A stretch of 64,000 bases of DNA, from positions 1 to 64,000 of IMG/VR virus record IMGVR_UViG_3300020473_000011; one strand, given 5' to 3'. Positions 6,553 to 61,722 of this stretch are shown here, piece after piece. The translations under genes were made by a program, and so were the position numbers. Each line of letters begins with the position of its first letter. The first letter of the stretch is position 1. A model generated the notes under the pieces. That model was not told the origin of the DNA. It saw only the letters and a list, made by a program, of their open reading frames with translations, and made no database searches.

Positions 6553-8454
6553 GTGGTTATAACTAACTGTGTAATAGGCTTTTTAGTGTCTGACGCTGTC
6601 AACAAATTAGTAGAGTCCCTGTCGCATGCAACCACACAGCATGAACGCAATCTAAGCGTACTGCTCAACATGGTAAGGCATGAACGTATTTTTACAGATA
6701 ACGCACTGGCAAACCTGCTTAACTACGCAGGCACCTCAACGCTAAAAGAACACCAGCAAAAGCTTCGGAAGTACATGAAGAGGTTCGACTACTCAGATAG
6801 TTCGGTTGCCTCGTATTCAAGCCGTCTTAAAAAGCTCGTTGCGTACTATCAAGACCATTGCCTATCTGATGAATTACCGACCCAACTAAGCATTGGGGAA
6901 AAGCTTGGGCATCTTGCACGTAAAGAACTTGGCCACTGCTCTCAGAAAGCGCAGCTAGAACACCTGCATAGCCTTAGTGGCATTCCACTGCCGTCGTTAA
7001 AGCGGTGGCTTACTAAAGGTACGAAACCAACCAAGGCACATCAAGACGCACTGTTTAAGCTGGCTGACCATTTCGATGTCTCACGTAACTACTTAACGAT
7101 AGACCCCGTTGCTATGGCCTCACCAGCTACTACCCGTATCGCAAAAGATTCAGTCAAGGCACTGCCCAAGGTTATTTGGGGTGGTCACTTACAGGGTCAG
7201 CTCGACAAGCTCTTGCTTTTCAAGACTAAGGCGCGAACACCCGCGTTATCACTGGCGTCCTTTAAACTGAATCGACGCGAGGCTCAAACACTCGTAGGTG
7301 GTGCTCGTTGGACAACGAATGCCGATGGTAGTAATGCTTCGGGTCAAAACTTTGAACGGATGCTTGACCGCTATTTTCGCTGGTTGTGCTCTAATTATGG
7401 TCTTGAGGCGGAGCAGCTTGACCTCAGTATGTTGCTGGTGGCCGAGTACCTAGAAGCTTATGTGGATGATTGCCTCGATGGTGAGTTCTACGCCACCTTG
7501 CAGACAACATTAAACTTACTTTCAGGCTTAATTGATCCGTTCCAAGGCTACCTTTGCCGCTACCACGCACCATTAACGGGTTATCCTCTCGGAGACGGGC
7601 AAGAGTCCGAGTACTTCGACCAACTAAGTATATGGCAAGAGCACGCCAGTTATATTAATAGCCAAGTTAAGACATGGTTACGTGATGTTCGCCACTTAAT
7701 GGCCGAGCAGCAACATGACAGTGACGACGCAGGTAAGCGGAATATTGGTTGGCTTCTTGATAGCTTAGATAGCACACTAGACCAAAGTGTTGCCGACGTT
7801 CGTCAACTGTCCGCTGATTTAAGCCAGCATAGCAAGCGCCTGACAGGTATTAATCGTCTTGCGCCAGCCCAAGTCAGCCTTTGGCTTCTTATGAGCTTAG
7901 AAGCGCCCCTGCGTGTCTCTAACTGGTGCGCCTTAAAGTTCTCCGACAAAGACCGTAGCAAAGAGCCAATTCTCTTCCGTGATAGTGGGCGTTGGCGTCT
8001 ACGTGTGCCCCGCAGTTACCTCAAGAACAGGCGTGGTCGTGAAGTTGAGGCAATCGATCAGGTTCTTAGTAACCCTCTGATCGGCGAGCTTATCGAACAG
8101 GTTCTCAATTACCGCAAAGAGCATAAAATAGAGACGGATGCAGTCTTTGTACAGACGCGATCAAGTAAGCATCGTAGCGCAGGCGAAGCCTACCAAAGAA
8201 CAGCATTGGCAAAATCAATACAAACTTGGACGGGACGAGCCGCATTCACGCGCTGGCCTGACCGCGACGTGGGGCGTGGCATCAACCCTCATGGTATGCG
8301 ACATTTTGTAGCGAGTTACGTTCTAGATAAGACAGGTGATTATAGACTCGCGGCTACGAGCCTAATGGATAGCGTGGCTGTGGTCATGAATGTCTATGGT
8401 AAAAATGACCACAGCCTAAATCAGAAGAAGCTCGCGGAGCTTCATCGGGTGTAG
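6553..8454 (+). CDS. Large tyrosine recombinase/integrase-like protein with an internal HTH
   Basis: PLRVSNW (R), HGMRH (HxxR), terminal Tyr in VMNVYGK; internal SGIPLPSLKRW HTH-like segment. Confidence 0.8.
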   Translation: MVITNCVIGFLVSDAVNKLVESLSHATTQHERNLSVLLNMVRHERIFTDNALANLLNYAGTSTLKEHQQKLRKYMKRFDYSDSSVASYSSRLKKLVAYYQDHCLSDELPTQLSIGEKLGHLARKELGHCSQKAQLEHLHSLSGIPLPSLKRWLTKGTKPTKAHQDALFKLADHFDVSRNYLTIDPVAMASPATTRIAKDSVKALPKVIWGGHLQGQLDKLLLFKTKARTPALSLASFKLNRREAQTLVGGARWTTNADGSNASGQNFERMLDRYFRWLCSNYGLEAEQLDLSMLLVAEYLEAYVDDCLDGEFYATLQTTLNLLSGLIDPFQGYLCRYHAPLTGYPLGDGQESEYFDQLSIWQEHASYINSQVKTWLRDVRHLMAEQQHDSDDAGKRNIGWLLDSLDSTLDQSVADVRQLSADLSQHSKRLTGINRLAPAQVSLWLLMSLEAPLRVSNWCALKFSDKDRSKEPILFRDSGRWRLRVPRSYLKNRRGREVEAIDQVLSNPLIGELIEQVLNYRKEHKIETDAVFVQTRSSKHRSAGEAYQRTALAKSIQTWTGRAAFTRWPDRDVGRGINPHGMRHFVASYVLDKTGDYRLAATSLMDSVAVVMNVYGKNDHSLNQKKLAELHRV

Positions 8455-18290: not shown

Positions 18291-19004
18291 TTGAGTATAA
18301 GAAGGTATGCAATGAGAAATTCCAAGACTCAAGTCCATGAGGCCATGGCACTAGTCGAAACTAATAACATAGAGGCCATATTTGACACTAAAACGTCGAC
18401 TCTCTCAGTAAAGTCACCATACAGCCATGACCTTGTTAATGCGCTTGTTGAGTCTGGTTTAGGCTACTACGACGAGAAAGGCCAATCTTGGGTCTTCGCT
18501 TTAGAACAAATGGAAAGCGTTGTACAAACCTATAACGAGCACTATCCAGACCTTGATATGCCCTCGGCATTATTAAAAGGGGCACTAACAGAGGCCGACG
18601 CGACTGAGGTCGATGCTGAGTCTCAAGTGGCCATTGCGGAGATTGAGGGTATGGGCGACAAAGCTGCCTCTGTCTTTGCGCTCGCAGAGTCCTACGCACT
18701 AGCTGTAGGTCGCATTGTCCCAACGTTGGATCTTAATCTTGTTGCCGCTGTAGCACGCGATTTTGGCATCTACCCTATCGGGTGGGAAGACGATGTAACG
18801 AAGCTTAATTCTCTACTTTCAGTTGAGCGCTATACTAAAGACATGGCACAGGAAGATAAAAATAAGGTATTAGCCCTACAACGTTTCCTGAACGCCTTAG
18901 AAGAGGGTAAGTTCCGTGGTGTCTATTCCCGTGATGTACTTAACCACTTGGTCAAGCCTGCGGGTCTTGCTGTAACTAAGAACCTATACAACCCAAATTA
19001 CTAG
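18291..19004 (+). CDS. Hypothetical protein
   Basis: 237-aa ORF; start probably ATG 18312. Confidence 0.65.
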   Translation: MSIRRYAMRNSKTQVHEAMALVETNNIEAIFDTKTSTLSVKSPYSHDLVNALVESGLGYYDEKGQSWVFALEQMESVVQTYNEHYPDLDMPSALLKGALTEADATEVDAESQVAIAEIEGMGDKAASVFALAESYALAVGRIVPTLDLNLVAAVARDFGIYPIGWEDDVTKLNSLLSVERYTKDMAQEDKNKVLALQRFLNALEEGKFRGVYSRDVLNHLVKPAGLAVTKNLYNPNY

Positions 19005-19216: not shown

Positions 19217-20455
19217 GTGAAAATACTTAAAGCGTTTCGTTACTTATTGGCTCCGACCGACGCCCAAGAAATCTTGTTTTACAAGATGGCGGGCTGTGGT
19301 CGTGTAGTTTATAACGACACGCTTGATTATTTGCTTAACATCATAAAGAAAGACCTAGGTATCACCGACCGAAAGGCATTGTACAAACATCTAAACAGCT
19401 TGGATTACAAAGCGCGTAAAGCGCTGTTTAGTAAGTTACCGCATCATTCGGCCATGAACAAACTGGTTACCGCTTGGAAAAAACTAGAACATCGCGAATG
19501 GCTCTCAGAAGCCTATCGCGATAATTTAGACCAACGCCAACGTGATTTACATAAAGCACTAGAGAAATGGTTGAAAGGCGCAGGGAGCTTCCCGCGCTTT
19601 AGGCAGCGCTCTACAGCCCATCACTCAACAATGCGCTTTGTGAACTTTAACAAATACTGCGCATTGCACGACAGTCGCGTCAAGTTGCCGAATAAGCTTG
19701 GCTTAGTTAAGTTCCGTAACTCACAACCAATCGAAGGCACACCGAAGAGTTGTACCGTTTCGCTTAACGCGTGTGGTCAATGGCACATTTCAATTCTTTG
19801 TGAACTCGAAGTATCTAAACCAATGCCTACGGCTGAGACAGCCGTAGGCATTGATATGGGTATTGCTAAAAACATGACCCTAAGTGACGGCACTGTTTAC
19901 AGTGGCGTCCACAGCTTCAAAGGTATTATGGGCAAGCTGGCCAAGTCGCAACGGAAGTTCGCCCGCCAAGAAAAAGGCTCAAACAACTGGAAGAAGCAAA
20001 AGTTAAAGATAGCTAAGCTTCACCAGAAAGCTGCGAACGCACGCAGAGACTTTCAACAAAAAGCCACGACCGAGATCAGCAAAAACCACGCAATGATAGT
20101 CGTTGAGGATTTGAAAGTTTCTAATATGTCACGCAGTGCAAAAGGTGACGCTGAAAACCACGGTAAAAACGTGAGGCAAAAGGCAGGACTAAACCGCTCT
20201 ATACTCGATCAGGGTTGGGGTGAAATTCGCCGACAGCTTGAATACAAGTCTGAATGGCTTGGCAACGTGTTTCATGCGGTACCACCGCACCACACGAGCC
20301 AGACGTGCCCTGCTTGTCGTCACAAAGCCAAAGAGAACCGATTGACACAAGCTGAGTTCATTTGTGTTGAGTGTGGTTTCAGCGAGAATGCCGACGTCGT
20401 CGGCGCTATCAACGTCTTACATCGCGGCATGGCCTTAGAGGCCAGCGCGAATTAG
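19217..20455 (+). CDS. tnpB: RNA-guided endonuclease TnpB (IS200/IS605 family)
   Basis: N-terminal HTH (KAFRYLLAPT), RuvC GIDMG / VVEDL / NADVVGAINV, zinc ribbon CPAC..CVEC. Confidence 0.95.
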   Translation: MKILKAFRYLLAPTDAQEILFYKMAGCGRVVYNDTLDYLLNIIKKDLGITDRKALYKHLNSLDYKARKALFSKLPHHSAMNKLVTAWKKLEHREWLSEAYRDNLDQRQRDLHKALEKWLKGAGSFPRFRQRSTAHHSTMRFVNFNKYCALHDSRVKLPNKLGLVKFRNSQPIEGTPKSCTVSLNACGQWHISILCELEVSKPMPTAETAVGIDMGIAKNMTLSDGTVYSGVHSFKGIMGKLAKSQRKFARQEKGSNNWKKQKLKIAKLHQKAANARRDFQQKATTEISKNHAMIVVEDLKVSNMSRSAKGDAENHGKNVRQKAGLNRSILDQGWGEIRRQLEYKSEWLGNVFHAVPPHHTSQTCPACRHKAKENRLTQAEFICVECGFSENADVVGAINVLHRGMALEASAN

Positions 20456-33935: not shown

Positions 33936-34604
33936 TTAGTTGCAGTCGGCGCAGCCCCAGTTGTTAAACGGATTCTCGACTAGCTCCGCATTGTAATAAC
34001 GGCGGTCTTGTGTCACCTTTTTGGTAAGGCCGTCAATTAATGGGAAGTCAGTGTCTTCCGTCTCGATTTCAGCAAGGCATAAGCCTTCATTTTTGTCTAA
34101 GAAAATATCAATTTCCCACAGGTAGCCCGAGTACTCAAACAAGTGACGGACTTTACTAATCCGTGCTGTAAGCGTCTCGTATATGGCCTCAGCGGACGTG
34201 ATTGGTATTGATGTTTCGTATTCTCTTCGGCTCGCGCCTGCTATGCGTTCTTTAAAGCAGAAGATTGCCTCAGCTTCGTCGATAATACGAATGCGAAGTG
34301 CCCACGAGGATGAGTCTACTTTGAAAAGTGCTTGTTCCTGACAGACCAAATCAACGCCGTCACAGGCCATCATTTCTTTGACATCTTTGGGGTCAATTGG
34401 GAAGGCAGTACTTGATGTATTTATACGACTCTTAACGAGTACAAAGCCCTGACCGTTCTTGTCTAACCCAAGCAGGACATCCCAGTCAGACTGCTCATTG
34501 ATGTAGGCTTGGCTTAATGTGTGACGCTCTTTGCAGTGCTCGCGGTACTTTTCATTGAATATGTTTACATCCATTACAAATTTTTCTTCGGTCTCTATGG
34601 CCAT
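33936..34604 (-). CDS. CYTH domain protein
   Basis: IETEEKF (ExExK), LRIRI, EYE, WEIDIF..NEGL..AEIE. Confidence 0.9.
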   Translation of the reverse strand: MAIETEEKFVMDVNIFNEKYREHCKERHTLSQAYINEQSDWDVLLGLDKNGQGFVLVKSRINTSSTAFPIDPKDVKEMMACDGVDLVCQEQALFKVDSSSWALRIRIIDEAEAIFCFKERIAGASRREYETSIPITSAEAIYETLTARISKVRHLFEYSGYLWEIDIFLDKNEGLCLAEIETEDTDFPLIDGLTKKVTQDRRYYNAELVENPFNNWGCADCN

Positions 34605-36312: not shown

Positions 36313-36692
36313 AGCCCCCTGAGTATTTCATCGGCGGACTGGTCACGCTTTAAAAGTATGGCATGCGCTCGGTCACGTAACTCAGTCCATTCGGTCAAGT
36401 CGGAATAAGCACAAGTTGTACGTAGCACTGTCACAAGCGCTAAATCTGAGAGCCTAGCCTCATCGACTGAGCTTAGGATAAGTGCAAGTACTTCTTTTGC
36501 GGCTGGACTTGCCTGCACAAGAGGTGTTGCACTGAAAGATGGCAGCACCAAGCCTGCAACGTCTCTCAAAGCCTCCATAAGCGGTCTAATATCTTTTGCT
36601 GACTTAATATCAGCGCCTCTCTTGTAATAGTCATCTAGCACAGCTGCAACAGTATCGTACGCTGCGGAAACCATCACGGCATTATCTTTCAT
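36306..36692 (-). CDS. Hypothetical protein
   Basis: 128-aa ORF with AGGA SD. Confidence 0.6.
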   Translation of the reverse strand: MKDNAVMVSAAYDTVAAVLDDYYKRGADIKSAKDIRPLMEALRDVAGLVLPSFSATPLVQASPAAKEVLALILSSVDEARLSDLALVTVLRTTCAYSDLTEWTELRDRAHAILLKRDQSADEILRGLY

Positions 36693-36705
36693 AAGACGTT
36701 CCTAT

Positions 36706-36730
36706 AAAAAAGGCTACCCATTGGTAGCCT
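36706..36730 (-). terminator. Intrinsic terminator after the Ser/Cys peptide genes
   Basis: AGGCTACC-loop-GGTAGCCT followed by a T-run on the minus strand. Confidence 0.75.
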
Positions 36731-36755
36731 AAAGTATTAACTTTTGGTCAGCAGT

Positions 36756-36935
36756 TTAGCACGAGCTGCTACAAGAGCTTGAGCTGCATGAACTACATGA
36801 GCTGCATGAACTGCACGAGCTACAGCTGCCACCGCCACCACCTGAGCCGCCGCGACGCTTACGTTTGTTTGACATGTTTAGAGCTGCTTTGTAGGTAAAG
36901 CGCTTGTGCCTTGTACATTTACTTAATTGACGCAT
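36756..36935 (-). CDS. 59-aa Gly/Ser/Cys-rich precursor-like peptide 2
   Basis: MRQLSKCTRHKRFTYKAALNMSNKRKRRGGSGGGGGSCSSCSSCSSCSSCSSSSCSSSC; GGGGAG SD. Confidence 0.8.
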   Translation of the reverse strand: MRQLSKCTRHKRFTYKAALNMSNKRKRRGGSGGGGGSCSSCSSCSSCSSCSSSSCSSSC

Positions 36936-37763: not shown

Positions 37764-38288
37764 ATGAATTATCGAGTAAATACGGATTCTGCGCGCCCTC
37801 AGCCCTTTCCACCCCATGGTAGGATTTCTGTAGAGGTTCACGGTACCAATAATGACCTAATCCATGTCAAATGCTTCGGCGCTTTCAATAAAGAAACAAT
37901 GCTAGCCTTAGTCGACATACAACAGCGCTATCGTGATTTATTGTGCCCCAAACGCTACGTGATCGTAGAGTTCATAGACACATGTTTAGCGCTGCCTGAG
38001 TTTTTTGCTGAGGCCACACGTCATCATAAAGAATTGGTTTCCCGTGGCCAGTCCTCAAAGGCCGTTGCTTATGTTATGCGCAAAGGTATCGAGGGTAAGT
38101 CCATGATGAAAGGCTTTTACTTGGGGGTCTATAAAGACGCTGGGATCCCAGTAGTCGTTACTGAGACCGTAGACGAAGCCCGCCAGTGGCTTAAAGAAAA
38201 AGGGCTGGGATCAGCCCAAACTAATGAGAATTGGAGCACACTCGCGGAATCGAACCGCGCTCATGCTGCTTTGCAGGCAGCCACCTAA
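37764..38288 (+). CDS. STAS/SEC14-like hypothetical protein
   Basis: Small alpha/beta pattern ending TVDEARQWL; 3' end overlaps tRNA-Cys antisense. Confidence 0.55.
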   Translation: MNYRVNTDSARPQPFPPHGRISVEVHGTNNDLIHVKCFGAFNKETMLALVDIQQRYRDLLCPKRYVIVEFIDTCLALPEFFAEATRHHKELVSRGQSSKAVAYVMRKGIEGKSMMKGFYLGVYKDAGIPVVVTETVDEARQWLKEKGLGSAQTNENWSTLAESNRAHAALQAAT

Positions 38289-38306
38289 CCACTCAGACAA
38301 GTGTGC
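38232..38306 (-). tRNA. tRNA-Cys(GCA)
   Basis: GCACACT/AGTGTGC acceptor, GCTGC-CT GCA AA-GCAGC anticodon arm, U73, encoded CCA. Confidence 0.95.
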
Positions 38307-38325
38307 GTTGTACAATGAATTAAGT

Positions 38326-38401
38326 TGGCAGGGGCTATAGGACTTGAACCTACAACCTTCGGAGTTGGAAACCGCTGCTCTCCCAATTGAGCTAAGCCCC
38401 T
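38326..38401 (-). tRNA. tRNA-Trp(CCA)
   Basis: AGGGGCT/AGCCCCT acceptor, G73, CCA; anticodon arm GCGGT-TT CCA AC-TCCGA. Confidence 0.93.
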
Positions 38402-38412
38402 GCAATGAAAAG

Positions 38413-38496
38413 TGGTACGGGTAGCGAGGATCGAACTCGCAAGGACATACCGACAGAATTTAAACCTGCTGCGTTTACCAGTTTCGCCATACCCGT
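38413..38496 (-). tRNA. tRNA-Leu(TAA)
   Basis: ACGGGTA/TACCCGT acceptor, A73, long variable region, GCAGG-TT TAA AT-TCTGT. Confidence 0.92.
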
Positions 38497-38502
38497 ATTG
38501 TT

Positions 38503-38590
38503 TGGTGGATAGCCTTGGACTCGAACCAAGAAGCCCTTTAAGGGAGCGGGGTTACAGCCCGCGACGCTACCAATTACGCTCTAACTATCC
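38503..38590 (-). tRNA. tRNA-Tyr(GTA) copy 2
   Basis: GGATAGT/GCTATCC acceptor, GCGGG-CT GTA AC-CCCGC, long variable arm, CCA. Confidence 0.92.
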
Positions 38591-38599
38591 AATAATGTT

Positions 38600-38677
38600 T
38601 GGTGGACACTGGCCAGATTCGAACTGCCGACACTCGGAACTTCAACCCGATGCTCTAACCAACTGAGCTAAGTGTCC
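38600..38677 (-). tRNA. tRNA-Phe(GAA)
   Basis: GGACACT/AGTGTCC acceptor, TCGGG-TT GAA GT-TCCGA, CCA; one extra G in the T-stem. Confidence 0.9.
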
Positions 38678-38687
38678 ACACTAAAAG

Positions 38688-38776
38688 TGGTGGATGAGGT
38701 AAGACTCGAACTTACAAAACCCTAAAGGGCAACGGGGTTACAGCCCGCGACGCTACCAATTACGTGTTACTCATCC
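38688..38776 (-). tRNA. tRNA-Tyr(GTA) copy 1
   Basis: GGATGAG/CTCATCC acceptor, GCGGG-CT GTA AC-CCCGT, long variable arm, CCA. Confidence 0.92.
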
Positions 38777-38790
38777 AAAAAATCTTTGTA

Positions 38791-39009
38791 CTACTCTACG
38801 TTGAGGCGTTCACCGTTCGGTAGTACAAGGGATAGCTCCACATGCCCACCAAGTGCCTCGACGTAAGCTGCCAGTTTAGTCACAGACAACTGTTTAATTT
38901 CCTTGCCTTCAAGTTTGCTGACACTTGAATCGCTAACCCGCATTTGAGCGGCAATGACCTCTTGCTTTACTTTTAGCTCTTTTCTGAGGTCTTTTAGATT
39001 AGGTTGCAT
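38791..39009 (-). CDS. XRE-family HTH protein (HigA-antitoxin-like)
   Basis: LKDLRKEL..KQEVIA..M.VSDSSVSKLE...LAAYVEALGGHVEL. Confidence 0.85.
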   Translation of the reverse strand: MQPNLKDLRKELKVKQEVIAAQMRVSDSSVSKLEGKEIKQLSVTKLAAYVEALGGHVELSLVLPNGERLNVE

Positions 39010-39038
39010 TTTGGTGTTCCTACTATGCGTAGGGCATT

Positions 39039-39073
39039 AAAAAAGCCCAGTGATAAATCAGCTGGGCTTTTTT
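39039..39073 (-). terminator. Attenuator terminator upstream of the HTH-tRNA operon
   Basis: AAAAAAGCCCAG-CTGATTTATCA-CTGGGCTTTTTT on the minus strand. Confidence 0.9.
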
Positions 39074-39141
39074 GACTAACGTCACATGGTCTGTTCCGAC
39101 CTGCCCAGAAGCTACCGCCCCCGAGCCTAGTTTCTCGGGGA
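39039..39141 (-). promoter_or_regulatory. Transcription attenuator with alternative hairpins
   Basis: CCCCGAG/CUCGGGG versus GCUCGGGGGC/GCUUCUGGGC versus CUGGGC/GCCCAG versus terminator. Confidence 0.8.
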
Positions 39142-39142
39142 A

Positions 39143-39187
39143 CTATCTAAATAAATAACACCAAAAATATAACGCTACGTTAGCCAT
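39143..39187 (-). CDS. Leader peptide MANVALYFWCYLFR (not in ORF track)
   Basis: ATG GCT AAC GTA GCG TTA TAT TTT TGG TGT TAT TTA TTT AGA TAG; TAAGG SD upstream. Confidence 0.88.
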   Translation of the reverse strand: MANVALYFWCYLFR

Positions 39188-39243
39188 GTCTTTCAACCTT
39201 AAAAAAAGTAAATTCGTGTAGCTCTCAATGAGCTGATATGACA

Positions 39244-39272
39244 ACTATAGCGTGACCCCTGAAAATTGCCAA
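39244..39272 (-). promoter_or_regulatory. Sigma70 promoter for the leader-HTH-tRNA operon
   Basis: TTGGCA-17 bp-TATAGT on the minus strand. Confidence 0.75.
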
Positions 39273-39282
39273 ACACTTTAGC

Positions 39283-39307
39283 TTTCCAAAATAGAAAGTT
39301 TTGGAAA
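39283..39307. promoter_or_regulatory. Inverted repeat, candidate operator between divergent promoters
   Basis: TTTCCAAAA-TAGAAAG-TTTTGGAAA. Confidence 0.5.
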
Positions 39308-39553
39308 TTAAGAACTTGACGCGGGTTTGTCGCGACGTGTAATATGCTGCGTAACACGGGGGATTCCCTTGAAACCCATGTGTGCCCAAGGGCTTTTATA
39401 AGTCCTCGCTGCTAGCAGGTACCCACACAGCGGTACTGCCAAACTATGACGCTTTAATGTGACTAGACCAAATTCTTAAAACCCTGTATTTAACGCGGGT
39501 GACTTTTGGAACGCTAGCGAAGTCTATATCCGCGTGAAGATATAGAGGTTTCG

Positions 39554-49068: not shown

Positions 49069-49698
49069 ATGGGGTTATTTAACAAGAAAAGGCACATTGT
49101 TTACGAGCAGCTATTGGTGCTGCCCGCCCACGCACAGTGCCCGAAAGCGTTTAAGTTTGATATTGATGTCGACGTCACGAGTCACAGTAAGGACAAGCTA
49201 GGTCGTCAATTCTCACCATTCTTATTAGGGGACGTCTACGTCGAGTCAGGTCTTTGGGCGCACTGTGTTGAAAACGCGTGGCAATTTTCTAAGGTTTATT
49301 CTGAGCATACAGACTTAAATGGCGACCCAACGCCTGCTTGGTACTCTTGGCGCGAGGCAGGGCTTGAGAGAGACCACCCTGTGCATGCGCCTATGGGGCG
49401 TGGCGCAAAGCATCTGTACTGGTACCATAAAGGTAAGAAGCTGAATGCACGTGAAGCACGAGAGCAGCTGTTTAAGCCATGGTACATGGAACTCGCGATG
49501 AACACTGATGCGTGGGATTGGTTAACTTCGGAGTATCTACAAGGTAAGCGTATTTTGATGCGCGACTTTAAGGCTATCGACCACGTGGCGGAGCAACGAA
49601 CCTTCACGGAATGCCTTGCCGAGCCGACAATACCTCTTTGCCATGGTTACCTACTTGGCGAGGCACTAGAGTCCTTAAATGAAAAAGCCCGCAACTAG
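49069..49698 (+). CDS. Conserved-looking hypothetical protein of large-virus type
   Basis: DVTS, FSPFLLG, VENAWQFSKVY, CHGY motifs. Confidence 0.7.
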   Translation: MGLFNKKRHIVYEQLLVLPAHAQCPKAFKFDIDVDVTSHSKDKLGRQFSPFLLGDVYVESGLWAHCVENAWQFSKVYSEHTDLNGDPTPAWYSWREAGLERDHPVHAPMGRGAKHLYWYHKGKKLNAREAREQLFKPWYMELAMNTDAWDWLTSEYLQGKRILMRDFKAIDHVAEQRTFTECLAEPTIPLCHGYLLGEALESLNEKARN

Positions 49699-53417: not shown

Positions 53418-55451
53418 TTAGAATGTAACTTTAACTACGCGGTTAAATGAACCGCTAACTTTAACTAGTAACGCGTTGCGCTGCGTTGATGAAAAACCAA
53501 GACCGCTTAGCTGGTCATCTGTAGGGTCGGCCTTCAACTTAGAACCGAGTGCTTCAAATACCTTGCGGTGTTTGTTCAGTTCAGGTGCTAAGTTTTCGTT
53601 GTAGAATCCACGGATCTTGTCAGGTGACTGGCAGCCCTCTAGCATGAAGAAGAAGTGCTTATTACCAGTCTCTTCACCGTCCCAGTGGTTCGGTGAGTTC
53701 ATTACCATTGATACTTTTGACCATTGATGTGTGTTAACACCCCACTCTTGGCGTGAAGCCTCTGACCCTTTGATTGAGCTGATGATCTTGACGCCCTCAC
53801 TGTGCGAGTAGTCGAACTCAAGCACTATGATACTGCGGCCGTTTTGTAGTGCGTCTTTGTGTTCAAACTTAATGGTATTCCCGAAGTACTCAAATTCTAA
53901 AACAAAGCCAAAATCAATACGTTCACGTTGACGGAAGTTCTTCACCCGTACGCGATGGCGACCCTCTTGCATACGTGAACGGTCGGCATAGGCAATGTTT
54001 TCAACGGGTGTGCGTGAGTCGACACCCGTCGCGTTCATATCAATATCAAGGAACCCACCTGTGCGATAGCTTTTCTTGGAAGTAAAGTCGATCACATTAC
54101 CGTCAGGCTCTTCCATGCTAAGGTCTAAGTCGTCGCCATTGAACCATGCTAGAGAACTACGCACGTCCGCGTTGACATTACCGCCTGCGGCCTTAACCAA
54201 CTGGGTAATAGAAGCGTCGGCCAACTCGCCATTATAGCTCCAAGAGAAGTTGTTAGGCCACTTCAACATATTAGGCGCATCAGGGTACACAGGCGCAACA
54301 AGGCTGACCAGATTCGGCACATGTCGGTTTTCCATCATGACTTCAAGACTAGTGGCCTTTGGTAGCACATCTGCTACGAAGTCCTCAATGCTAATCTCTT
54401 CGACCTTATCGAACTTTTGCTTATTGTTGGCCTTTGTAGGCGCGAGAAGGTCAAGCGCATTACCCTTCATTTTCTTTTGAGCATCACGGTCGGCGAAGAG
54501 CACGTTATTCACTGTGATGTCTTCTAACCGAGCTGGGCGGCGGTAAAGCGAGTCTTCGAAGCCAAGCTGTATGATGGTCTCATTCGCTTCATCGATCTGC
54601 TTTTGTGTGATAAGGGCAGTTGGGCGCTTATAGTTCTCAGGCGCAACCTTCGCTTCATAAGATTTTACGGCATCTTCTAGGTCGCTGCCTTCGGAAAGGT
54701 CTGATAAGAGCGTCCCCATAGAAGTGTTGCGAAAACGGCCACTGTTACCAAGTTCTACAGACTTTTCCCAGAAAAACAGTTGTTCTTTTAGTGGGTCATC
54801 TAGTTTTTCTATGCGAGCGAACTCAGTTTTAACCTTAACGAGCGTGTCAACGATATGCTTGAACTCTTCACCGCGATACAAGGATCCCTGTGCAATTAGG
54901 TCACTTACTAACTCACACGAATAAAGGTCTACCTCACGTACGGAGCGCTCTAGTACCATTTTGTTAGCACGGGTGTCTGAAAGGTATGAGCCAGCCTCGG
55001 CATTTACAAACTTGTTAGGTAGGTCAAAATAGAAGTGTTCCCACTTCTTCTGTTCACCATTGGCCATAGGCTCAAAGTTGTGAGAAGTGCCCACGCGGGT
55101 TTCCCAGTGACGATACACATTCTGGATAGAGTCGCTATGTTGGCGTACGAAAAGGGAAAGTGCGTCAGCTACGGCCTGACGGAAGTCACTAAGCTCAATA
55201 TCCCACACTGTAACTAGTTTGCCATCAATGATAGCAATAACATTACCAATATTTCGGATGAAGTTGCGGCAGCAAGCGCAATCGTGTTCAGTACGTTCGC
55301 GATAAAGAGGGTTGGTGCCTTTAGGGAAGCTTGAAAGATATTCGTTGTACAACTCGTCTTTATTTAACTCGACGGTGTATAGCTCAGTGCTGTTTTCGGT
55401 CATATACGCTAACTGCGCATTAACAGCGTCACGCATGGCATTAAAGCTCAT
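53418..55451 (-). CDS. Large phage-type conserved protein (HxCxxC motif; DLDL/LDIDMN/PVENI domain)
   Basis: EHDCACCRNFI, WPNNFSWSYNG, DDLDL, LDIDMN, PVENI. Confidence 0.8.
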   Translation of the reverse strand: MSFNAMRDAVNAQLAYMTENSTELYTVELNKDELYNEYLSSFPKGTNPLYRERTEHDCACCRNFIRNIGNVIAIIDGKLVTVWDIELSDFRQAVADALSLFVRQHSDSIQNVYRHWETRVGTSHNFEPMANGEQKKWEHFYFDLPNKFVNAEAGSYLSDTRANKMVLERSVREVDLYSCELVSDLIAQGSLYRGEEFKHIVDTLVKVKTEFARIEKLDDPLKEQLFFWEKSVELGNSGRFRNTSMGTLLSDLSEGSDLEDAVKSYEAKVAPENYKRPTALITQKQIDEANETIIQLGFEDSLYRRPARLEDITVNNVLFADRDAQKKMKGNALDLLAPTKANNKQKFDKVEEISIEDFVADVLPKATSLEVMMENRHVPNLVSLVAPVYPDAPNMLKWPNNFSWSYNGELADASITQLVKAAGGNVNADVRSSLAWFNGDDLDLSMEEPDGNVIDFTSKKSYRTGGFLDIDMNATGVDSRTPVENIAYADRSRMQEGRHRVRVKNFRQRERIDFGFVLEFEYFGNTIKFEHKDALQNGRSIIVLEFDYSHSEGVKIISSIKGSEASRQEWGVNTHQWSKVSMVMNSPNHWDGEETGNKHFFFMLEGCQSPDKIRGFYNENLAPELNKHRKVFEALGSKLKADPTDDQLSGLGFSSTQRNALLVKVSGSFNRVVKVTF

Positions 55452-56679: not shown

Positions 56680-57057
56680 ATGAGAACTGAACGGGCTTAC
56701 CTCACAGCATCCAACAACCGCTGGGTCTTCTTACTGCTAATCTTTATCGTGGTAATACCGCTTTTGTACAACATTATCATGCCAATTGATAGAGAAGAGC
56801 CTGTGGCTACAAATGGCTCGACAATAGCGACAACAAGCACACTTAGCCTTAAAGACATCACGAAGAACATGAGCTTTGTATGCTTAAACGATTATGTCTA
56901 CATGCACCCGAAGGGCTACCCACGAGCTTTAGAGCCTGTCCTAATTAATGGCAATGACATAAGTACAGGTGCAAGGCTTATCCCATGCGATGACTATGAA
57001 CTTGTGTACAATGCTGTTCTGAGTGTTGAGGATGCCATGGGGAAGGGCAATGAATAA
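56680..57057 (+). CDS. Membrane-anchored hypothetical protein
   Basis: N-terminal TM; GGAG SD. Confidence 0.65.
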   Translation: MRTERAYLTASNNRWVFLLLIFIVVIPLLYNIIMPIDREEPVATNGSTIATTSTLSLKDITKNMSFVCLNDYVYMHPKGYPRALEPVLINGNDISTGARLIPCDDYELVYNAVLSVEDAMGKGNE

Positions 57058-57583
57058 CGGTACTTCTGAAAGCACTGTGAGCTTGCTTTTTCTAGACATT
57101 GACGGCGTTCTACGCGGGCTTCACACTAAGGCTTCGCCGTACAAGCGTGCGGCTATCGAACGCATGGGCATTCACGATGCGAGAACTCAGCTCGAACTAA
57201 CACTGTTAGACTGGTACTTGGTACAGCAACTTTGTGCTTTCGTGACGGCTAACAATATCAAGGTTGTCGTGACCTCTACTTGGCGTGAGGGCTGGGAATC
57301 CGAGCACTTTACCGAGCTGTTTAGGTTATGTGGTGCGGAGCTTGCCAACGACTGCATCATAGGATGCACACCCCTCATGGACGAGATAAGCGAAACGAGT
57401 AAACGGGGTCATGAGATCAAGGCATACCTAGATGACACCCAAAGGAAGCGCAACTATGCAATCTTAGATGATCAAGGGGTTAAGGCATTCTTGCCTGAGC
57501 AATACGAACGCTTAGTCAGCACGTGCCCCTATAAGGGGTTGCTCGCATCGGACTTGGACAAGGTACTAGGCCATTTTGCCTAG
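57050..57583 (+). CDS. HAD domain protein (Swiss-army-knife RNA-repair-like HAD family)
   Basis: FLDIDGVL, VVTSTWR, RGHEIKAYL, YAILDD. Confidence 0.85.
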   Translation: MNNGTSESTVSLLFLDIDGVLRGLHTKASPYKRAAIERMGIHDARTQLELTLLDWYLVQQLCAFVTANNIKVVVTSTWREGWESEHFTELFRLCGAELANDCIIGCTPLMDEISETSKRGHEIKAYLDDTQRKRNYAILDDQGVKAFLPEQYERLVSTCPYKGLLASDLDKVLGHFA

Positions 57584-60690: not shown

Positions 60691-61722
60691 TTATACAAAC
60701 TCTACGGCGGATTGTAAGTCTTTGAACCCACGGTCGTCATAGCGGCGCGTCGTATCAACATTGGAATGGCCAAGTAGCTTAGCCACCTCAAAAATGTCAC
60801 GGCCATTAAGAAGTAATCTAGTCGCAAAGTAATGACGAAGAGCATGCGGGTGCAGCCCCGTTACATTGTCGGCCTCGCCAGCTTTACGGATAACGTTGTA
60901 GACCCCAGTCGTTGATAGTCCATTGTCTAAAACTTTATCGACGATGTTTACCTTGCGGAATAAAGGGGCTGACCGCTTTTTATTGTTCGTTGTAAGCACG
61001 ACCCGTGCCCAGTCCATTAGGGCTTTATGTAGCTCGCTATTCATAGGAACGTCACGAAGCTTCGCTCCCTTACCCAATACACTGATAAACGACTCTTTAT
61101 GACCACTCTTAGAAAAACGGATGTCTTGTAGGCGCAGGTTGGCCACTTCTTCGCGGCGTAGGCCAGCATGTGACATGCACATGAAAATCGCGCGGTTTCT
61201 CACGCTGATGTTTTTAAGGGTGCCAATACTACCGATAACTTGATTAACAGTAGCCGCAGGAAGCGCCCCTAAGTCGCGCTCAGACGTTAAGTTGCTAAGA
61301 TTGTCTAGTTGCCCTTCTAACCACGTTAAATCGACCTCATCGTTGCTAGCGTTCGATTTAGCCTGCTTCTTTGCATTACTCTTAACGGATTTGATGGCAT
61401 GCTTAATCTTTTCGTAGGCTGTCTCGGTAAGCTTGTCTGAGATAAGTGCCCAGTTAAGTGTTTTTCGAACGATAGTTAGAACAGTGTTTATATAGCTTGT
61501 AGACTTACCCTCTTCGACTAGTGCAGTTCTCAGGTCTGAGTATTCTTGGATGGTCAACGCGTGCCACTCGAAACTAAGGACAGACTCATTATTGTCAGCC
61601 TTTGCTGCGTGAGGTGTGCGCTTTAGCGCAGCGCGTAAGTTCTTTACTACAGCGCCCTTTGAAGCGTCTGAGGTAAGGCTCGCGAGATATAGGTCAATAT
61701 AAGCTTGCATAGTCGGTCTCAA
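60691..61722 (-). CDS. Xer-like tyrosine recombinase
   Basis: GLRREE, GKGAK, HPHALRHYFAT, LLGHSNVDTTRRY. Confidence 0.93.
   Translation of the reverse strand: MRPTMQAYIDLYLASLTSDASKGAVVKNLRAALKRTPHAAKADNNESVLSFEWHALTIQEYSDLRTALVEEGKSTSYINTVLTIVRKTLNWALISDKLTETAYEKIKHAIKSVKSNAKKQAKSNASNDEVDLTWLEGQLDNLSNLTSERDLGALPAATVNQVIGSIGTLKNISVRNRAIFMCMSHAGLRREEVANLRLQDIRFSKSGHKESFISVLGKGAKLRDVPMNSELHKALMDWARVVLTTNNKKRSAPLFRKVNIVDKVLDNGLSTTGVYNVIRKAGEADNVTGLHPHALRHYFATRLLLNGRDIFEVAKLLGHSNVDTTRRYDDRGFKDLQSAVEFV

What the first reader, a model, noticed from the sequence alone, without database searches (positions are those of the whole stretch)
38232..38776. All six tRNAs decode UNN codons and five of six lack the MiaA A36-A37-A38 motif
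Seen: positions 34-38 are Tyr GUA-AC (both copies), Phe GAA-GU, Leu UAA-AU, Trp CCA-AC and Cys GCA-AA. Established: in E. coli-type bacteria the A36 tRNAs (Phe, Tyr, Trp, Cys, Leu-UUR, some Ser) carry A36-A37-A38 and receive i6A/ms2i6A37 from MiaA/MiaB. Inference: the array is essentially the MiaA client set minus Ser, rebuilt to be i6A-independent or to escape a nuclease recognising the host loop. The two Tyr copies share a 32-nt D-loop/anticodon-arm core but have different, fully paired acceptor and T stems, consistent with selection for function.
Basis: partly seen in the sequence, partly recalled or inferred. Interest (0 to 1): 0.8.

Follow-up and report, generated by a model that had tools for sequence, protein, structure and literature searches.

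The report
Six phage tRNAs for U-starting codons
A giant marine virus-like element carries one operon of six working tRNA genes that all read codons starting with U, and most lack the three-adenine signal the bacterial enzyme MiaA needs; the same loop design recurs in many phages, so it is a real but not unique feature that may let phages translate without relying on host tRNAs.

Summary
Window 38232-38776 (minus strand) holds six tRNA genes: Tyr, Phe, Tyr, Leu-UAA, Trp and Cys. All have A36 and an encoded CCA end, and only Cys keeps A36-A37-A38. They form one unit with a promoter-like site, an HTH gene and a terminator hairpin. Marine RNA libraries contain contigs over it. The genes look functional: the two Tyr copies and a strain variant differ almost only by pair-preserving changes, and no anticodon loop changes.

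The window is the start of a ~416-420 kb element (IMG/VR UViG), binned with an Aestuariibacter MAG. Its TnpB points to marine Gammaproteobacteria. E. coli carries the AAA motif on all five tRNA species.

The loops are not unique. T5, Vibrio, Acinetobacter and Streptomyces phages carry Phe-G37, Tyr-C38 or Leu-U38. Of 205 A36 tRNAs sampled from IMG/VR, 21% lack A37-A38: Phe 58%, Ser 0 of 32.

An A36-only array with four of five tRNA species lacking the motif is an extreme case (P about 1e-4 and 1e-2 to 1e-3).

Best reading: a phage set of UNN decoders that MiaA cannot modify. Evasion of an anticodon nuclease, a published idea, remains a strong rival. The host's tRNAs and two thirds of the genome were not seen.

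The parts
39244..39272 (-). sigma-70-like promoter candidate (TTGGCA, 17 nt spacer, TATAGT) upstream of the HTH gene and the tRNA array
   Evidence: Consensus scan, 10 of 12 matches. RNA-library contigs stop at about 39083 and there is none at 39152-39545. This is a consensus match only, not proof of a promoter.
38791..39009 (-). 72-aa helix-turn-helix (Xre-type) protein gene, lying 14 nt upstream of the first tRNA on the same strand
   Evidence: Pfam HTH_37 and HTH_3, phrog_2339. It has the highest RNA-contig depth in the 6 kb laid out.
38688..38776 (-). tRNA-Tyr (GUA), copy 2; loop CU-GUA-AC; long variable arm; A73; CCA encoded
   Evidence: ARAGORN; Rfam 46.6 bits; loop read.
38600..38677 (-). 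tRNA-Phe (GAA); loop UU-GAA-GU (G37); a bulged G in the 3' strand of the T stem
   Evidence: ARAGORN; Rfam 43.7 bits with a 1-nt insertion. The strain in run X2 lacks the extra G.
38503..38590 (-). tRNA-Tyr (GUA), copy 1; loop CU-GUA-AC
   Evidence: ARAGORN; Rfam local match of 28.5 bits; covariation within the Tyr family.
38413..38496 (-). tRNA-Leu (UAA); loop UU-UAA-AU; long variable arm
   Evidence: ARAGORN; Rfam 52.7 bits.
38326..38401 (-). tRNA-Trp (CCA); loop UU-CCA-AC; G27-A43 and U31-U39 mismatches in the anticodon stem; G73
   Evidence: ARAGORN; Rfam 59.9 bits. All five substitutions in the strain variant preserve pairing.
38232..38306 (-). tRNA-Cys (GCA); loop CU-GCA-AA; the only member that keeps A36-A37-A38; U73
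   Evidence: ARAGORN; Rfam 49.2 bits.
38202..38217 (-). intrinsic-terminator-like hairpin (6 bp, 5 of them G-C) followed by a T run, 15 nt after tRNA-Cys
   Evidence: The strain variant changes only the loop bases 38209 and 38210.

Best explanation
The region is a single transcription unit: promoter-like site, small HTH gene, six tRNA genes, terminator. It lies on a ~416-420 kb marine virus-like element that most likely replicates in an Alteromonadaceae-type gammaproteobacterium.

The six genes are functional tRNAs for Phe, Leu (UUA/UUG), Tyr (two copies), Trp and Cys. Between them they decode every U-starting sense codon except the Ser box. Four of the five tRNA species have lost A37 or A38. 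Because A36-A37-A38 is required by MiaA, they should not receive i6A or ms2i6A.

I propose that the element brings its own decoders for the weakest codon class (U1-A36). These decoders work without the host's MiaA/MiaB step. UNN decoding would then continue when the host's A36 tRNAs are depleted, cut or under-modified during infection.

Basis of each step:
- Shown: the genes, their loops, their structural conservation, presence in RNA libraries, and recurrence of the same loops in other phages.
- Inferred: no isopentenylation, identity of the host, and the selective benefit.
For: 1. The genes are real and constrained.
   - tRNA calls and Rfam scores.
   - Discriminator bases fit E. coli identity rules: U73 Cys, G73 Trp, A73 Tyr, Phe and Leu (sequence; the rules are from my own knowledge).
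   - In the phage-type tRNA-Tyr family, 98% of cells are paired, 14 of 24 pairs carry compensatory changes, and 0 of 500 shuffles reach that level.
   - In strain X2, six substitutions fall in stems of Trp and Leu. All keep or improve pairing, and none touches an anticodon loop.
2. Expression. Metatranscriptome contigs cover 38364-39083 at the highest depth of the 6 kb region, with gaps in the flanking intergenic stretches.
3. The AAA motif is necessary for MiaA (PMC5699536).
4. Likely host class.
   - The 416 kb version sits in an NCBI MAG labelled Aestuariibacter sp..
   - The closest named TnpB relatives are Psychromonas, Halomonas, Vibrio and Shewanella.
   - E. coli Phe, Tyr, Trp, Cys and Leu-UAA are all A37-A38, and so is Legionella Phe.
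   - V. cholerae has MiaA/MiaB-dependent A37 modification on these tRNAs (PMC12588516).
   - The window tRNAs are only 60-78% identical to their E. coli counterparts.
5. There is a class-level signal.
   - A36-only composition: about 6e-5.
   - At least 5 of 6 lacking the motif: 0.002.
   - In Vibrio phage VS1 the motif is lost in 4 of 7 A36 tRNAs and in 0 of 11 U36 tRNAs (p = 0.011).
   - IMG/VR locus L109 shows the same pattern, with everything but Ser lacking the motif.
6. The ranking of motif loss across phage tRNAs is Phe 58%, Leu-CAA 29%, Tyr and Trp 20%, Cys 15%, Leu-UAA 14%, Ser 0 of 32 (Ser against the rest, p = 5e-4). This roughly parallels dependence on MiaA in V. cholerae, which is strongest for Phe UUU and Tyr UAU and absent for Cys UGU.
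7. G37 in tRNA-Phe also occurs in cells, on the Enterococcus faecalis chromosome.
Against: - There are no modification data, so 'not isopentenylated' rests on the published motif rule.
- Loss of A38 is as common in phage U36 tRNAs, which MiaA does not touch (16% against 21%). Position 38 changes may therefore reflect general loop plasticity or nuclease evasion rather than MiaA.
- Positions 32, 37 and 38 are the only freely mutable loop positions, so any loop diversification destroys the motif.
- Cys keeps the motif.
- Leu-UAA ranks low in motif loss, although UUR decoding is known to depend on MiaA.
- The host's tRNAs were not seen.
- About 285 kb of the element was not read and may encode other tRNAs.
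- No viral structural gene was seen in the ~132 kb read, so the virus label rests on IMG/VR.
- Bacterial TrmD prefers G36-G37 (my own knowledge), so the state of G37 in the Phe tRNA is unknown.
Confidence: 0.42

Rival explanations
1. Nuclease evasion. The loop changes were selected because a host, or competing-element, anticodon nuclease recognises the canonical loops of these tRNAs, possibly the shared A36-(ms2i6)A37-A38 feature. The phage copies replace the cut host tRNAs and are themselves insensitive. Loss of MiaA modification is a by-product.
For: - The published hypothesis rests on exactly this kind of evidence (van den Berg 2023).
- There is experimental precedent for phage tRNAs rescuing infection from tRNA-targeting defences: T5 tRNA-Tyr against retron Eco7 and tRNA-Lys against PrrC, and phage tRNA libraries used as 'nuclease-resistant rescue tRNAs'.
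- Phage tRNAs of other classes lose A38 too.
- The window carries conflict- and RNA-repair-type genes: HAD_SAK_2 at 57032-57583, a NADAR-like protein at 49069-49698, and DUF8224, which neighbours an RNA ligase gene in Klebsiella phages.
Against: - My searches and reading found no nuclease that targets the five anticodons GAA, UAA, GUA, CCA and GCA together.
- T5 tRNA-Tyr, the one shown to counter Eco7, keeps A37-A38.
- G37 in tRNA-Phe recurs in phages of Actinobacteria and Gammaproteobacteria, which would need Phe-specific nucleases in many phyla.
- Ser A36 tRNAs never change (0 of 32).
Confidence: 0.3
2. Plain supply. The array simply tops up tRNAs that are scarce in the host: single-isoacceptor, low-copy species such as Trp, Cys, Phe, Tyr and Leu-UAA. 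The loop differences are neutral drift in old phage-lineage tRNAs under relaxed constraint.
For: - Codon compensation is the classic explanation for phage tRNAs (reviewed).
- The tRNAs are old and divergent, 60-78% identical to E. coli.
- About 16-21% of phage tRNAs in the A36 and U36 classes lack A38.
Against: - The served codons make up 13% of the window's codons, with ordinary amino-acid frequencies: F 3.8, Y 3.6, C 1.4, W 1.3%; UUA+UUG is 29% of Leu.
- GC content (46%) is not far from Alteromonadaceae values (my own knowledge).
- Drift does not explain an A36-only set (about 6e-5).
- Drift does not explain motif loss in 4 of 5 species when the background is 21%.
- Drift does not explain invariant anticodon loops across strains and between the Tyr copies.
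Confidence: 0.17
3. Host mimicry. The unknown host's own Phe, Tyr, Trp and Leu tRNAs carry the same bases at 37 and 38, so nothing was changed.
For: Some cells do have G37 in tRNA-Phe (Enterococcus faecalis chromosome). The host was not identified directly.
Against: - Host leads point to Gammaproteobacteria, where E. coli and Legionella are canonical and V. cholerae carries the modification.
- The same loops occur in phages whose hosts are known to be canonical, such as T5 on E. coli.
- The Tyr D-arm/anticodon-arm probe hit only one contig among the genomes of 185,579 species. That contig is a 33% GC fragment carrying a Trp-Cys-Tyr mini-array, probably viral.
Confidence: 0.07
4. Non-functional relics or integration targets: decayed tRNA copies or attachment sites.
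For: The Phe gene has a bulged T stem and the Trp gene has two mismatches in its anticodon stem. Integrase genes exist in the window, at 6553-8454 and 60691-61722.
Against: - All six genes have complete cloverleaves, encoded CCA ends and correct discriminator bases.
- Changes between copies and between strains are compensatory.
- The array has an operon layout with a terminator, and RNA-library contigs cover it.
- The integrases lie more than 20 kb away.
Confidence: 0.04

Closest known systems
Phage tRNA clusters whose anticodon loops differ from the host's, proposed to resist anticodon nucleases (van den Berg et al. 2023, eLife, PMC10264068; T5 tRNA-Tyr against retron Eco7 and tRNA-Lys against PrrC, PMC11555353)
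   Same: Tandem tRNA genes on a large virus-like element. The loops differ from the canonical bacterial loop at the positions next to the anticodon. The genes appear to be expressed.
   Different: Those clusters hold 20-36 tRNAs of all classes, and the argument is made nuclease by nuclease. Here the set consists only of A36 tRNAs, and the common denominator of the changes is loss of the MiaA determinant, which that paper does not discuss (no mention of A37, A38, i6A or MiaA).
tRNA-Phe (G37), tRNA-Tyr (C38) and tRNA-Leu-UAA (U38) of cultured phages: T5, Vibrio phages VS1 (KVP40-like) and VCPH (T5-like), Acinetobacter phage phi1_092033, Streptomyces phage Gilson
   Same: Identical bases at 37 and 38. 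VS1 has the same Tyr anticodon arm as copy 2, and its Leu-UAA loop and three loop-proximal stem pairs match the window's.
   Different: In those phages these tRNAs sit among many others, and Trp and Cys keep AAA. The window tRNAs are only 60-80% identical to them. Nobody seems to have commented on the pattern in the literature I could search.
Cellular A36 tRNAs that do without i6A: Enterococcus faecalis tRNA-Phe G37 (seen here), Mollicutes tRNA-Phe m1G37 and eukaryotic or archaeal tRNA-Phe yW37 (the last two from my own knowledge and PMC5699536)
   Same: A purine other than an isopentenylated A stacks on the weak U1-A36 pair. This shows that decoding UUY without MiaA is workable.
   Different: Those are whole-organism solutions with dedicated G37 methylation. 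Here the variant tRNAs would act in a cell whose own tRNAs are probably MiaA-modified, and the state of G37 is unknown.
Codon-compensation tRNA sets of phages (Bailly-Bechet 2007, as summarised in PMC10264068)
   Same: A small number of phage tRNAs added to the host pool.
   Different: No codon or amino-acid bias in the window calls for these five species.

Membership tests
Functional bacterial-type tRNA genes (Rfam RF00005) | Cloverleaf scoring above the family threshold | tested here: met
   Five genes score 43.7-59.9 bits against a threshold of 29. Tyr1 scores 28.5 bits as a local match but is called by ARAGORN and shares its core with Tyr2.
Functional bacterial-type tRNA genes (Rfam RF00005) | Stems maintained by compensatory change among relatives | tested here: met
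   Tyr family: 98.2% of cells paired, 14 of 24 pairs changed on both sides, 0 of 500 shuffles as high. Strain variant: 6 of 6 stem substitutions in Trp and Leu keep pairing.
Functional bacterial-type tRNA genes (Rfam RF00005) | Mature, aminoacylated RNA is made | tested here: inconclusive
   RNA-library contigs cover 38364-39083. Contigs do not show processing or charging, and DNA carry-over cannot be excluded.
MiaA (i6A37) substrate tRNAs | A36 | tested here: met
   All six anticodons end in A.
MiaA (i6A37) substrate tRNAs | A37 | tested here: not met
   Phe has G37. The other five have A37.
MiaA (i6A37) substrate tRNAs | A38, completing the AAA motif that is necessary for modification | tested here: not met
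   Only Cys has A38. Tyr x2 and Trp have C38; Leu and Phe have U38. Motif rule: PMC5699536.
MiaA (i6A37) substrate tRNAs | Actual presence of i6A or ms2i6A | not testable with these tools
   Needs LC-MS or an enzyme assay.
Phage tRNAs that evade anticodon nucleases | Encoded by a phage | tested here: inconclusive
   The contig is an IMG/VR UViG. It has phage-type genes (phrog_1735 at 2e-265, dUTPase, dCMP deaminase). No capsid, portal or terminase gene was seen in ~132 kb.
Phage tRNAs that evade anticodon nucleases | Loop differs from the host's tRNA at or near a known cleavage site | tested here: inconclusive
   The loops differ from E. coli-type loops. The actual host's tRNAs and its nucleases are unknown.
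Phage tRNAs that evade anticodon nucleases | Resistance to cleavage, or rescue of infection | not testable with these tools
   Needs experiments.
Codon-compensation tRNA set | Served codons are over-used by the element relative to the host | tested here: inconclusive
   The window's usage is unremarkable. Host usage is not available.

The most novel reading that the evidence does not exclude
The MiaA/MiaB-modified tRNA class may itself be an axis of phage-host conflict. Either the modification is withdrawn or becomes limiting during infection, or an undiscovered effector reads the A36-(ms2i6)A37-A38 loop. A subset of phages would answer with a complete, i6A-independent set of UNN decoders. This element, IMG/VR locus L109 and, in part, KVP40-like phages would be examples. 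The recurrent G37 in about half of all phage tRNA-Phe genes would be the most visible trace of this.
Probability: 0.15. Interest if true: 0.8.

Novelty: new variant of a known kind. Interest (0 to 1): 0.55.

Why it matters
Phage tRNAs are now seen as counter-defence tools, but attention has gone to single tRNAs against single nucleases.

This array suggests a class-level rule. The tRNAs that depend most on i6A/ms2i6A, Phe above all, are the ones phages most often re-shape, while Ser tRNAs are never touched.

If that holds, it links tRNA modification capacity (DMAPP supply, and the Fe-S enzyme MiaB, which may be limiting in iron-poor sea water) to phage fitness. It also gives a simple sequence marker for it, and offers natural MiaA-independent UNN decoders for synthetic biology.

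If it does not hold, the array is still a compact test set for finding nucleases that act on A36 tRNAs.

Tried and rejected
- Near-identical DNA in cultured phages: none.
- Exact Trp pattern in IMG/VR: only the source contig.
- Relatives of the 407-aa neighbour gene: only the same element in IMG/VR. In the 5.8-billion-protein set there was one 44% relative, on a 7.4 kb contig that ends before any array.
- Metagenome scan with the Tyr core: it found the same element in an ENA assembly, plus a phage closely related to the L002 phage. No diverged copy of the array was available for covariation of the other five tRNAs.
- Host identification through a tRNA match: the genome scan gave one probable viral fragment, not a host.
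- Walking the contig: six look-ups gave about 68 kb beyond the window and no tRNA. I stopped with about 285 kb unread.
- Neighbouring proteins (167 aa, UCP032817-like; 174 aa, STAS/SpoIIAA-like fold): no link to tRNA.
- DUF8224 protein: no solved relative.
- A PADLOC 'Csx1' hit (E 2e-36) somewhere in the window could not be located in two follow-up searches.
- Adjacency of A36 tRNAs in phage arrays in general: not enriched (22 observed against 19.2 expected, p = 0.23). A common ancestral 'UNN block' is therefore not supported.
- Stop-codon recoding: rejected, because the ORFs are long and dense in the standard code (83% coding).
Full report
**What is there**

ARAGORN finds six tRNA genes in the 64 kb window. 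All lie on the minus strand between 38232 and 38776. In order of transcription they are Tyr-GUA, Phe-GAA, Tyr-GUA, Leu-UAA, Trp-CCA and Cys-GCA.

Rfam's tRNA model scores five of them at 43.7-59.9 bits. The downstream Tyr copy (38503-38590) scores 28.5 bits as a local match, against a threshold of 29. All six encode the CCA end.

| tRNA | Positions 32-38 | Positions 37-38 |
|---|---|---|
| Tyr (both copies) | CU-GUA-AC | A, C |
| Phe | UU-GAA-GU | G, U |
| Leu-UAA | UU-UAA-AU | A, U |
| Trp | UU-CCA-AC | A, C |
| Cys | CU-GCA-AA | A, A |

The discriminator bases are U73 for Cys, G73 for Trp and A73 for Tyr, Phe and Leu. Tyr and Leu have long variable arms. These fit bacterial identity rules (sequence; the rules are from my own knowledge).

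There are oddities:
- Trp has G27-A43 and U31-U39 mismatches in its anticodon stem.
- Phe has a bulged G in the T stem.
- Both Tyr genes carry two extra nucleotides between position 9 and the D stem.

**Operon and expression**

A 72-aa HTH gene (38791-39009, minus strand) ends 14 nt before the first tRNA. A sigma-70-like site lies at 39272-39244. A G+C-rich hairpin with a T run lies at 38217-38202, 15 nt after tRNA-Cys.

In two metatranscriptome runs, contigs cover 38364-39083 at the highest depth of the 6 kb region laid out. There is nothing at 39152-39545 or 36394-36787. That patchiness argues for RNA rather than carried-over DNA. Contigs cannot show processing or charging.

**Functional constraint**

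The two Tyr genes are 82% identical. They share an identical 32-nt stretch covering D stem, D loop and anticodon arm. Three acceptor pairs and three T-stem pairs have changed on both sides.

I aligned them with five relatives: two other uncultured phages, a contig from a MAG, Streptomyces phage Gilson and the marine megaphage LR745206. In that alignment 98.2% of cells are paired and 14 of 24 pairs carry compensatory changes. None of 500 shuffles, and no slid register, comes close.

A strain variant of the element in run X2 differs at nine places in the array:
- Five substitutions fall in stems of Trp: 7:66 U-A to G-C, two changes to G-U, and one G-U to A-U.
- One in Leu turns the G27-U43 wobble into A-U.
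- One falls in the D loop of Cys.
- One falls in a spacer.
- One deletes the bulged G of Phe.

No anticodon loop changes. These are working genes under purifying selection.

**What the element is**

The window is bases 1-64000 of IMGVR_UViG_3300020473_000011, which is 281,557 bp. Longer versions exist:
- 419,531 bp in an ENA assembly.
- 416,263 bp in NCBI assembly GCA_024449875.1. NCBI labels the proteins of this assembly 'MAG: Aestuariibacter sp.'.
- A further MAG (GCA_035092225.1) has a 277 kb contig that starts, by my arithmetic, at window position ~38,256. That is inside the array, so assemblies tend to break there.

The IS605-type TnpB at 19217-20455 has its closest named relatives in Psychromonas (69-70%), Halomonas, Vibrio, Oceanospirillaceae and Shewanella. 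The window also encodes a ProQ/FinO-domain protein. I therefore take a marine gammaproteobacterium of the Alteromonadaceae type as the probable host. This is an inference.

Most proteins have no family. Those that do include:
- a phrog_1735/DUF8224 protein, 50% identical to proteins of Ackermannviridae and Klebsiella phages;
- dUTPase, dCMP deaminase and two tyrosine recombinases;
- HU and a ribosome hibernation factor;
- an RNase T-like exonuclease;
- a CYTH protein, a NADAR-like protein and HAD_SAK_2 'RNA repair' phosphatase domains.

I saw no capsid, portal or terminase gene in the ~132 kb I read. The virus label therefore rests on IMG/VR.

**Is the set complete?**

I walked about 68 kb beyond the window and found no further tRNA. 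About 285 kb remains unread.

**Are the loops unusual?**

For bacteria, yes:
- E. coli K-12 Phe, Tyr, Trp, Cys and Leu-UAA are all A37-A38.
- A small cellular sample (Bacillus, Acetoanaerobium, Legionella, Enterococcus, Nocardia and E. coli) gives 21 of 22 A36 tRNAs with A37-A38. The exception is Enterococcus faecalis tRNA-Phe, which has G37.
- In V. cholerae the A37 modification on these tRNAs depends on MiaA/MiaB. Its loss hurts Phe UUU and Tyr UAU decoding most, and Cys UGU not at all (PMC12588516).
- The AAA motif is necessary, though not sufficient, for isopentenylation (PMC5699536).

For phages, no. The same loops are widespread:

| Phage | Loops lacking A37-A38 |
|---|---|
| T5 | Phe GAA-GA |
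| Vibrio phage VCPH | Tyr AC, Phe GC |
| Vibrio phage VS1 | Phe GU, Tyr AC, Leu-UAA AU, Leu-CAA AC |
| Acinetobacter phage phi1_092033 | Tyr AC, Phe GA |
| Streptomyces phage Gilson | Phe GC |

VS1's Tyr has the same anticodon arm as the window's copy 2.

I also sampled 214 IMG/VR loci using two generic T-loop patterns. This gave 1,035 unique tRNAs, of which 205 have A36, and 21% of those lack A37-A38:

| tRNA type | Share lacking A37-A38 |
|---|---|
| Phe | 58% (12 of 24 have G37) |
| Leu-CAA | 29% |
| Tyr | 20% |
| Trp | 20% |
| Cys | 15% |
| Leu-UAA | 14% |
| Ser | 0 of 32 |

Ser against the rest gives Fisher p = 5e-4.

The U36 class, which MiaA does not touch, lacks A38 in 16% of cases. 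Loss of A38 as such is therefore not specific to MiaA clients. G37 after A36 is the class-specific feature.

**How extreme is this array?**

- With 19.8% A36 tRNAs in phages, six of six has a probability of about 6e-5, and five distinct species about 3e-4.
- No sampled locus with three or more tRNAs is all A36.
- With a 21% background, at least five of six lacking the motif gives 0.002, or 0.008 if Tyr is counted once.
- The trait clusters by phage. Of 17 loci with three or more non-Ser A36 tRNAs, two lack the motif in all of them. One of these, L109, has Cys, Trp, Tyr, Phe and Leu-CAA without the motif and only Ser with it.
- In VS1 the loss is specific to the A36 class: 4 of 7 against 0 of 11 U36 tRNAs (p = 0.011).

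**Origin of the tRNAs**

They are 60-78% identical to their E. coli counterparts. A 20-nt probe from the Tyr D arm and anticodon stem hit one contig among the genomes of 185,579 species. That contig is a 33% GC, 6.9 kb fragment binned with a Saprospiraceae MAG, and it carries a Trp-Cys-Tyr mini-array of its own. These are old tRNAs of a phage lineage, not recent captures from a host.

**Codon supply**

The nine codons served make up 13% of the window's codons. Amino-acid frequencies are ordinary. This gives no support for codon compensation, although host usage is unknown.

**Mechanism**

What unites the five anticodons is the weak U1-A36 pair and the MiaA/MiaB modification that normally props it up. 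I therefore favour a class-level explanation. The element supplies UNN decoders that cannot be, and need not be, isopentenylated. UNN decoding then survives depletion or under-modification of the host pool. Three observations fit this:
- the ranking of motif loss, with Phe highest and Ser never;
- the specificity for the A36 class in VS1;
- the existence of G37 tRNA-Phe in cells.

Several points count against it:
- A38 is lost equally often in U36 tRNAs.
- Positions 32, 37 and 38 are the only loop positions free to change.
- Cys keeps the motif.
- There is no chemical evidence.

The main rival is evasion of an anticodon nuclease. This is a published idea for phage tRNAs (PMC10264068) with experimental precedents, and RNA-repair and conflict genes lie nearby. 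However, I found no known nuclease that targets these five tRNAs together. A nuclease that did so would have to read the very motif that MiaA uses.

Plain supply, host mimicry and gene decay are less likely, for the reasons given under the rivals.

**Verdict**

The MiaA logic is sound but unproven. The loops are a recurrent property of phage tRNAs rather than a one-off redesign. This array is an extreme, UNN-only case of that property.

In the literature I could search I found no paper that links phage tRNA loops to the MiaA determinant.

Noticed in passing
window 38503-38590 and 38688-38776; L002:4017-4105; L012:141-229; L011:1726-1811; L005:8002-8088; L006:19999-20083: There is a 'phage-type' tRNA-Tyr family with an invariant 16-nt D arm and two extra nucleotides between position 9 and the D stem. 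It is shared by marine uncultured phages, Streptomyces phage Gilson and the megaphage LR745206, while the acceptor and T stems covary freely. A 20-nt probe from it found no cellular tRNA-Tyr among 185,579 species. Why the D arm is frozen is unexplained.
   Followed up: partly
window 38613-38614 (tRNA-Phe T stem): The window's tRNA-Phe has a bulged G in the 3' strand of the T stem. The strain in run X2 lacks it and has a perfect 5-bp stem.
   Followed up: partly
window 19217-20455 (+), with the ORF at 18291-19004 upstream: An IS605-family TnpB (OrfB_IS605 plus Cas12f-like TNB domain). Its closest named relatives are in Psychromonas, Halomonas, Vibrio and Shewanella, and an 81% relative sits on another ~416 kb contig.
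   Followed up: partly
window 53418-55451 (-) and 57032-57583 (+): A 677-aa DUF8224/phrog_1735 protein, 50% identical to proteins of Ackermannviridae and Klebsiella phages, where it neighbours RNA ligase and phosphoesterase genes. A HAD_SAK_2 ('Swiss Army Knife RNA repair') phosphatase domain lies 1.6 kb away. This may be an RNA-repair or conflict island.
   Followed up: partly
window, coordinates not resolved: Pfam hits to a ribosome hibernation factor (S30AE), ProQ/FinO, HU, an RNase T-like exonuclease, a nucleoside deoxyribosyltransferase-like protein and a second HAD_SAK_2. There is also a PADLOC 'Csx1' hit (E 2e-36) that two follow-up searches did not locate.
   Followed up: partly
window 33936-34604 (-) and 49069-49698 (+): A CYTH-domain protein, and a DUF6939/NADAR-like protein. 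NADAR domains act as antitoxins to DarT ADP-ribosyltransferases.
   Followed up: no
L002 (IMGVR_UViG_3300037455_000402) and L012 (Ga0326512_10000008): Another large phage with 27 tRNAs, a tmRNA and two tRNAs with a CUA anticodon. This suggests reassignment of the TAG stop codon.
   Followed up: no
L011 1573-1811 (CAYOBX010000335.1, Saprospiraceae MAG): A 33% GC, 6.9 kb contig with a Trp-Cys-Tyr mini-array. This is another small array made only of UNN decoders, and is probably a viral fragment binned with a MAG.
   Followed up: partly
L242 19993 (Enterococcus faecalis, chromosomal segment filed as a plasmid): The cellular tRNA-Phe reads GAA-GC, so G37 in tRNA-Phe is not confined to phages.
   Followed up: no
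L245 (Polaromonas sp. P1-6, 564 kb plasmid): A 19-tRNA array on a plasmid, next to HNH endonuclease and integrase genes. Its Ser-UGA and Cys tRNAs carry A37-G38.
   Followed up: no
L141-L146 (element, about 73-132 kb in window-equivalent coordinates): This stretch encodes a PAPS-reductase-like 521-aa protein, a KefC-like Na/H exchanger with a TrkA_N domain, a radical SAM protein, a weak AcrVA2-like hit, a HipA kinase with an HTH neighbour, and four tandem ~256-aa paralogues. No structural virion gene was recognised.
   Followed up: partly
window 37764-38288 (+): A 174-aa ORF with a STAS/SpoIIAA-like predicted fold. It converges on the array and overlaps both the terminator hairpin and the last 57 nt of tRNA-Cys on the other strand.
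   Followed up: partly
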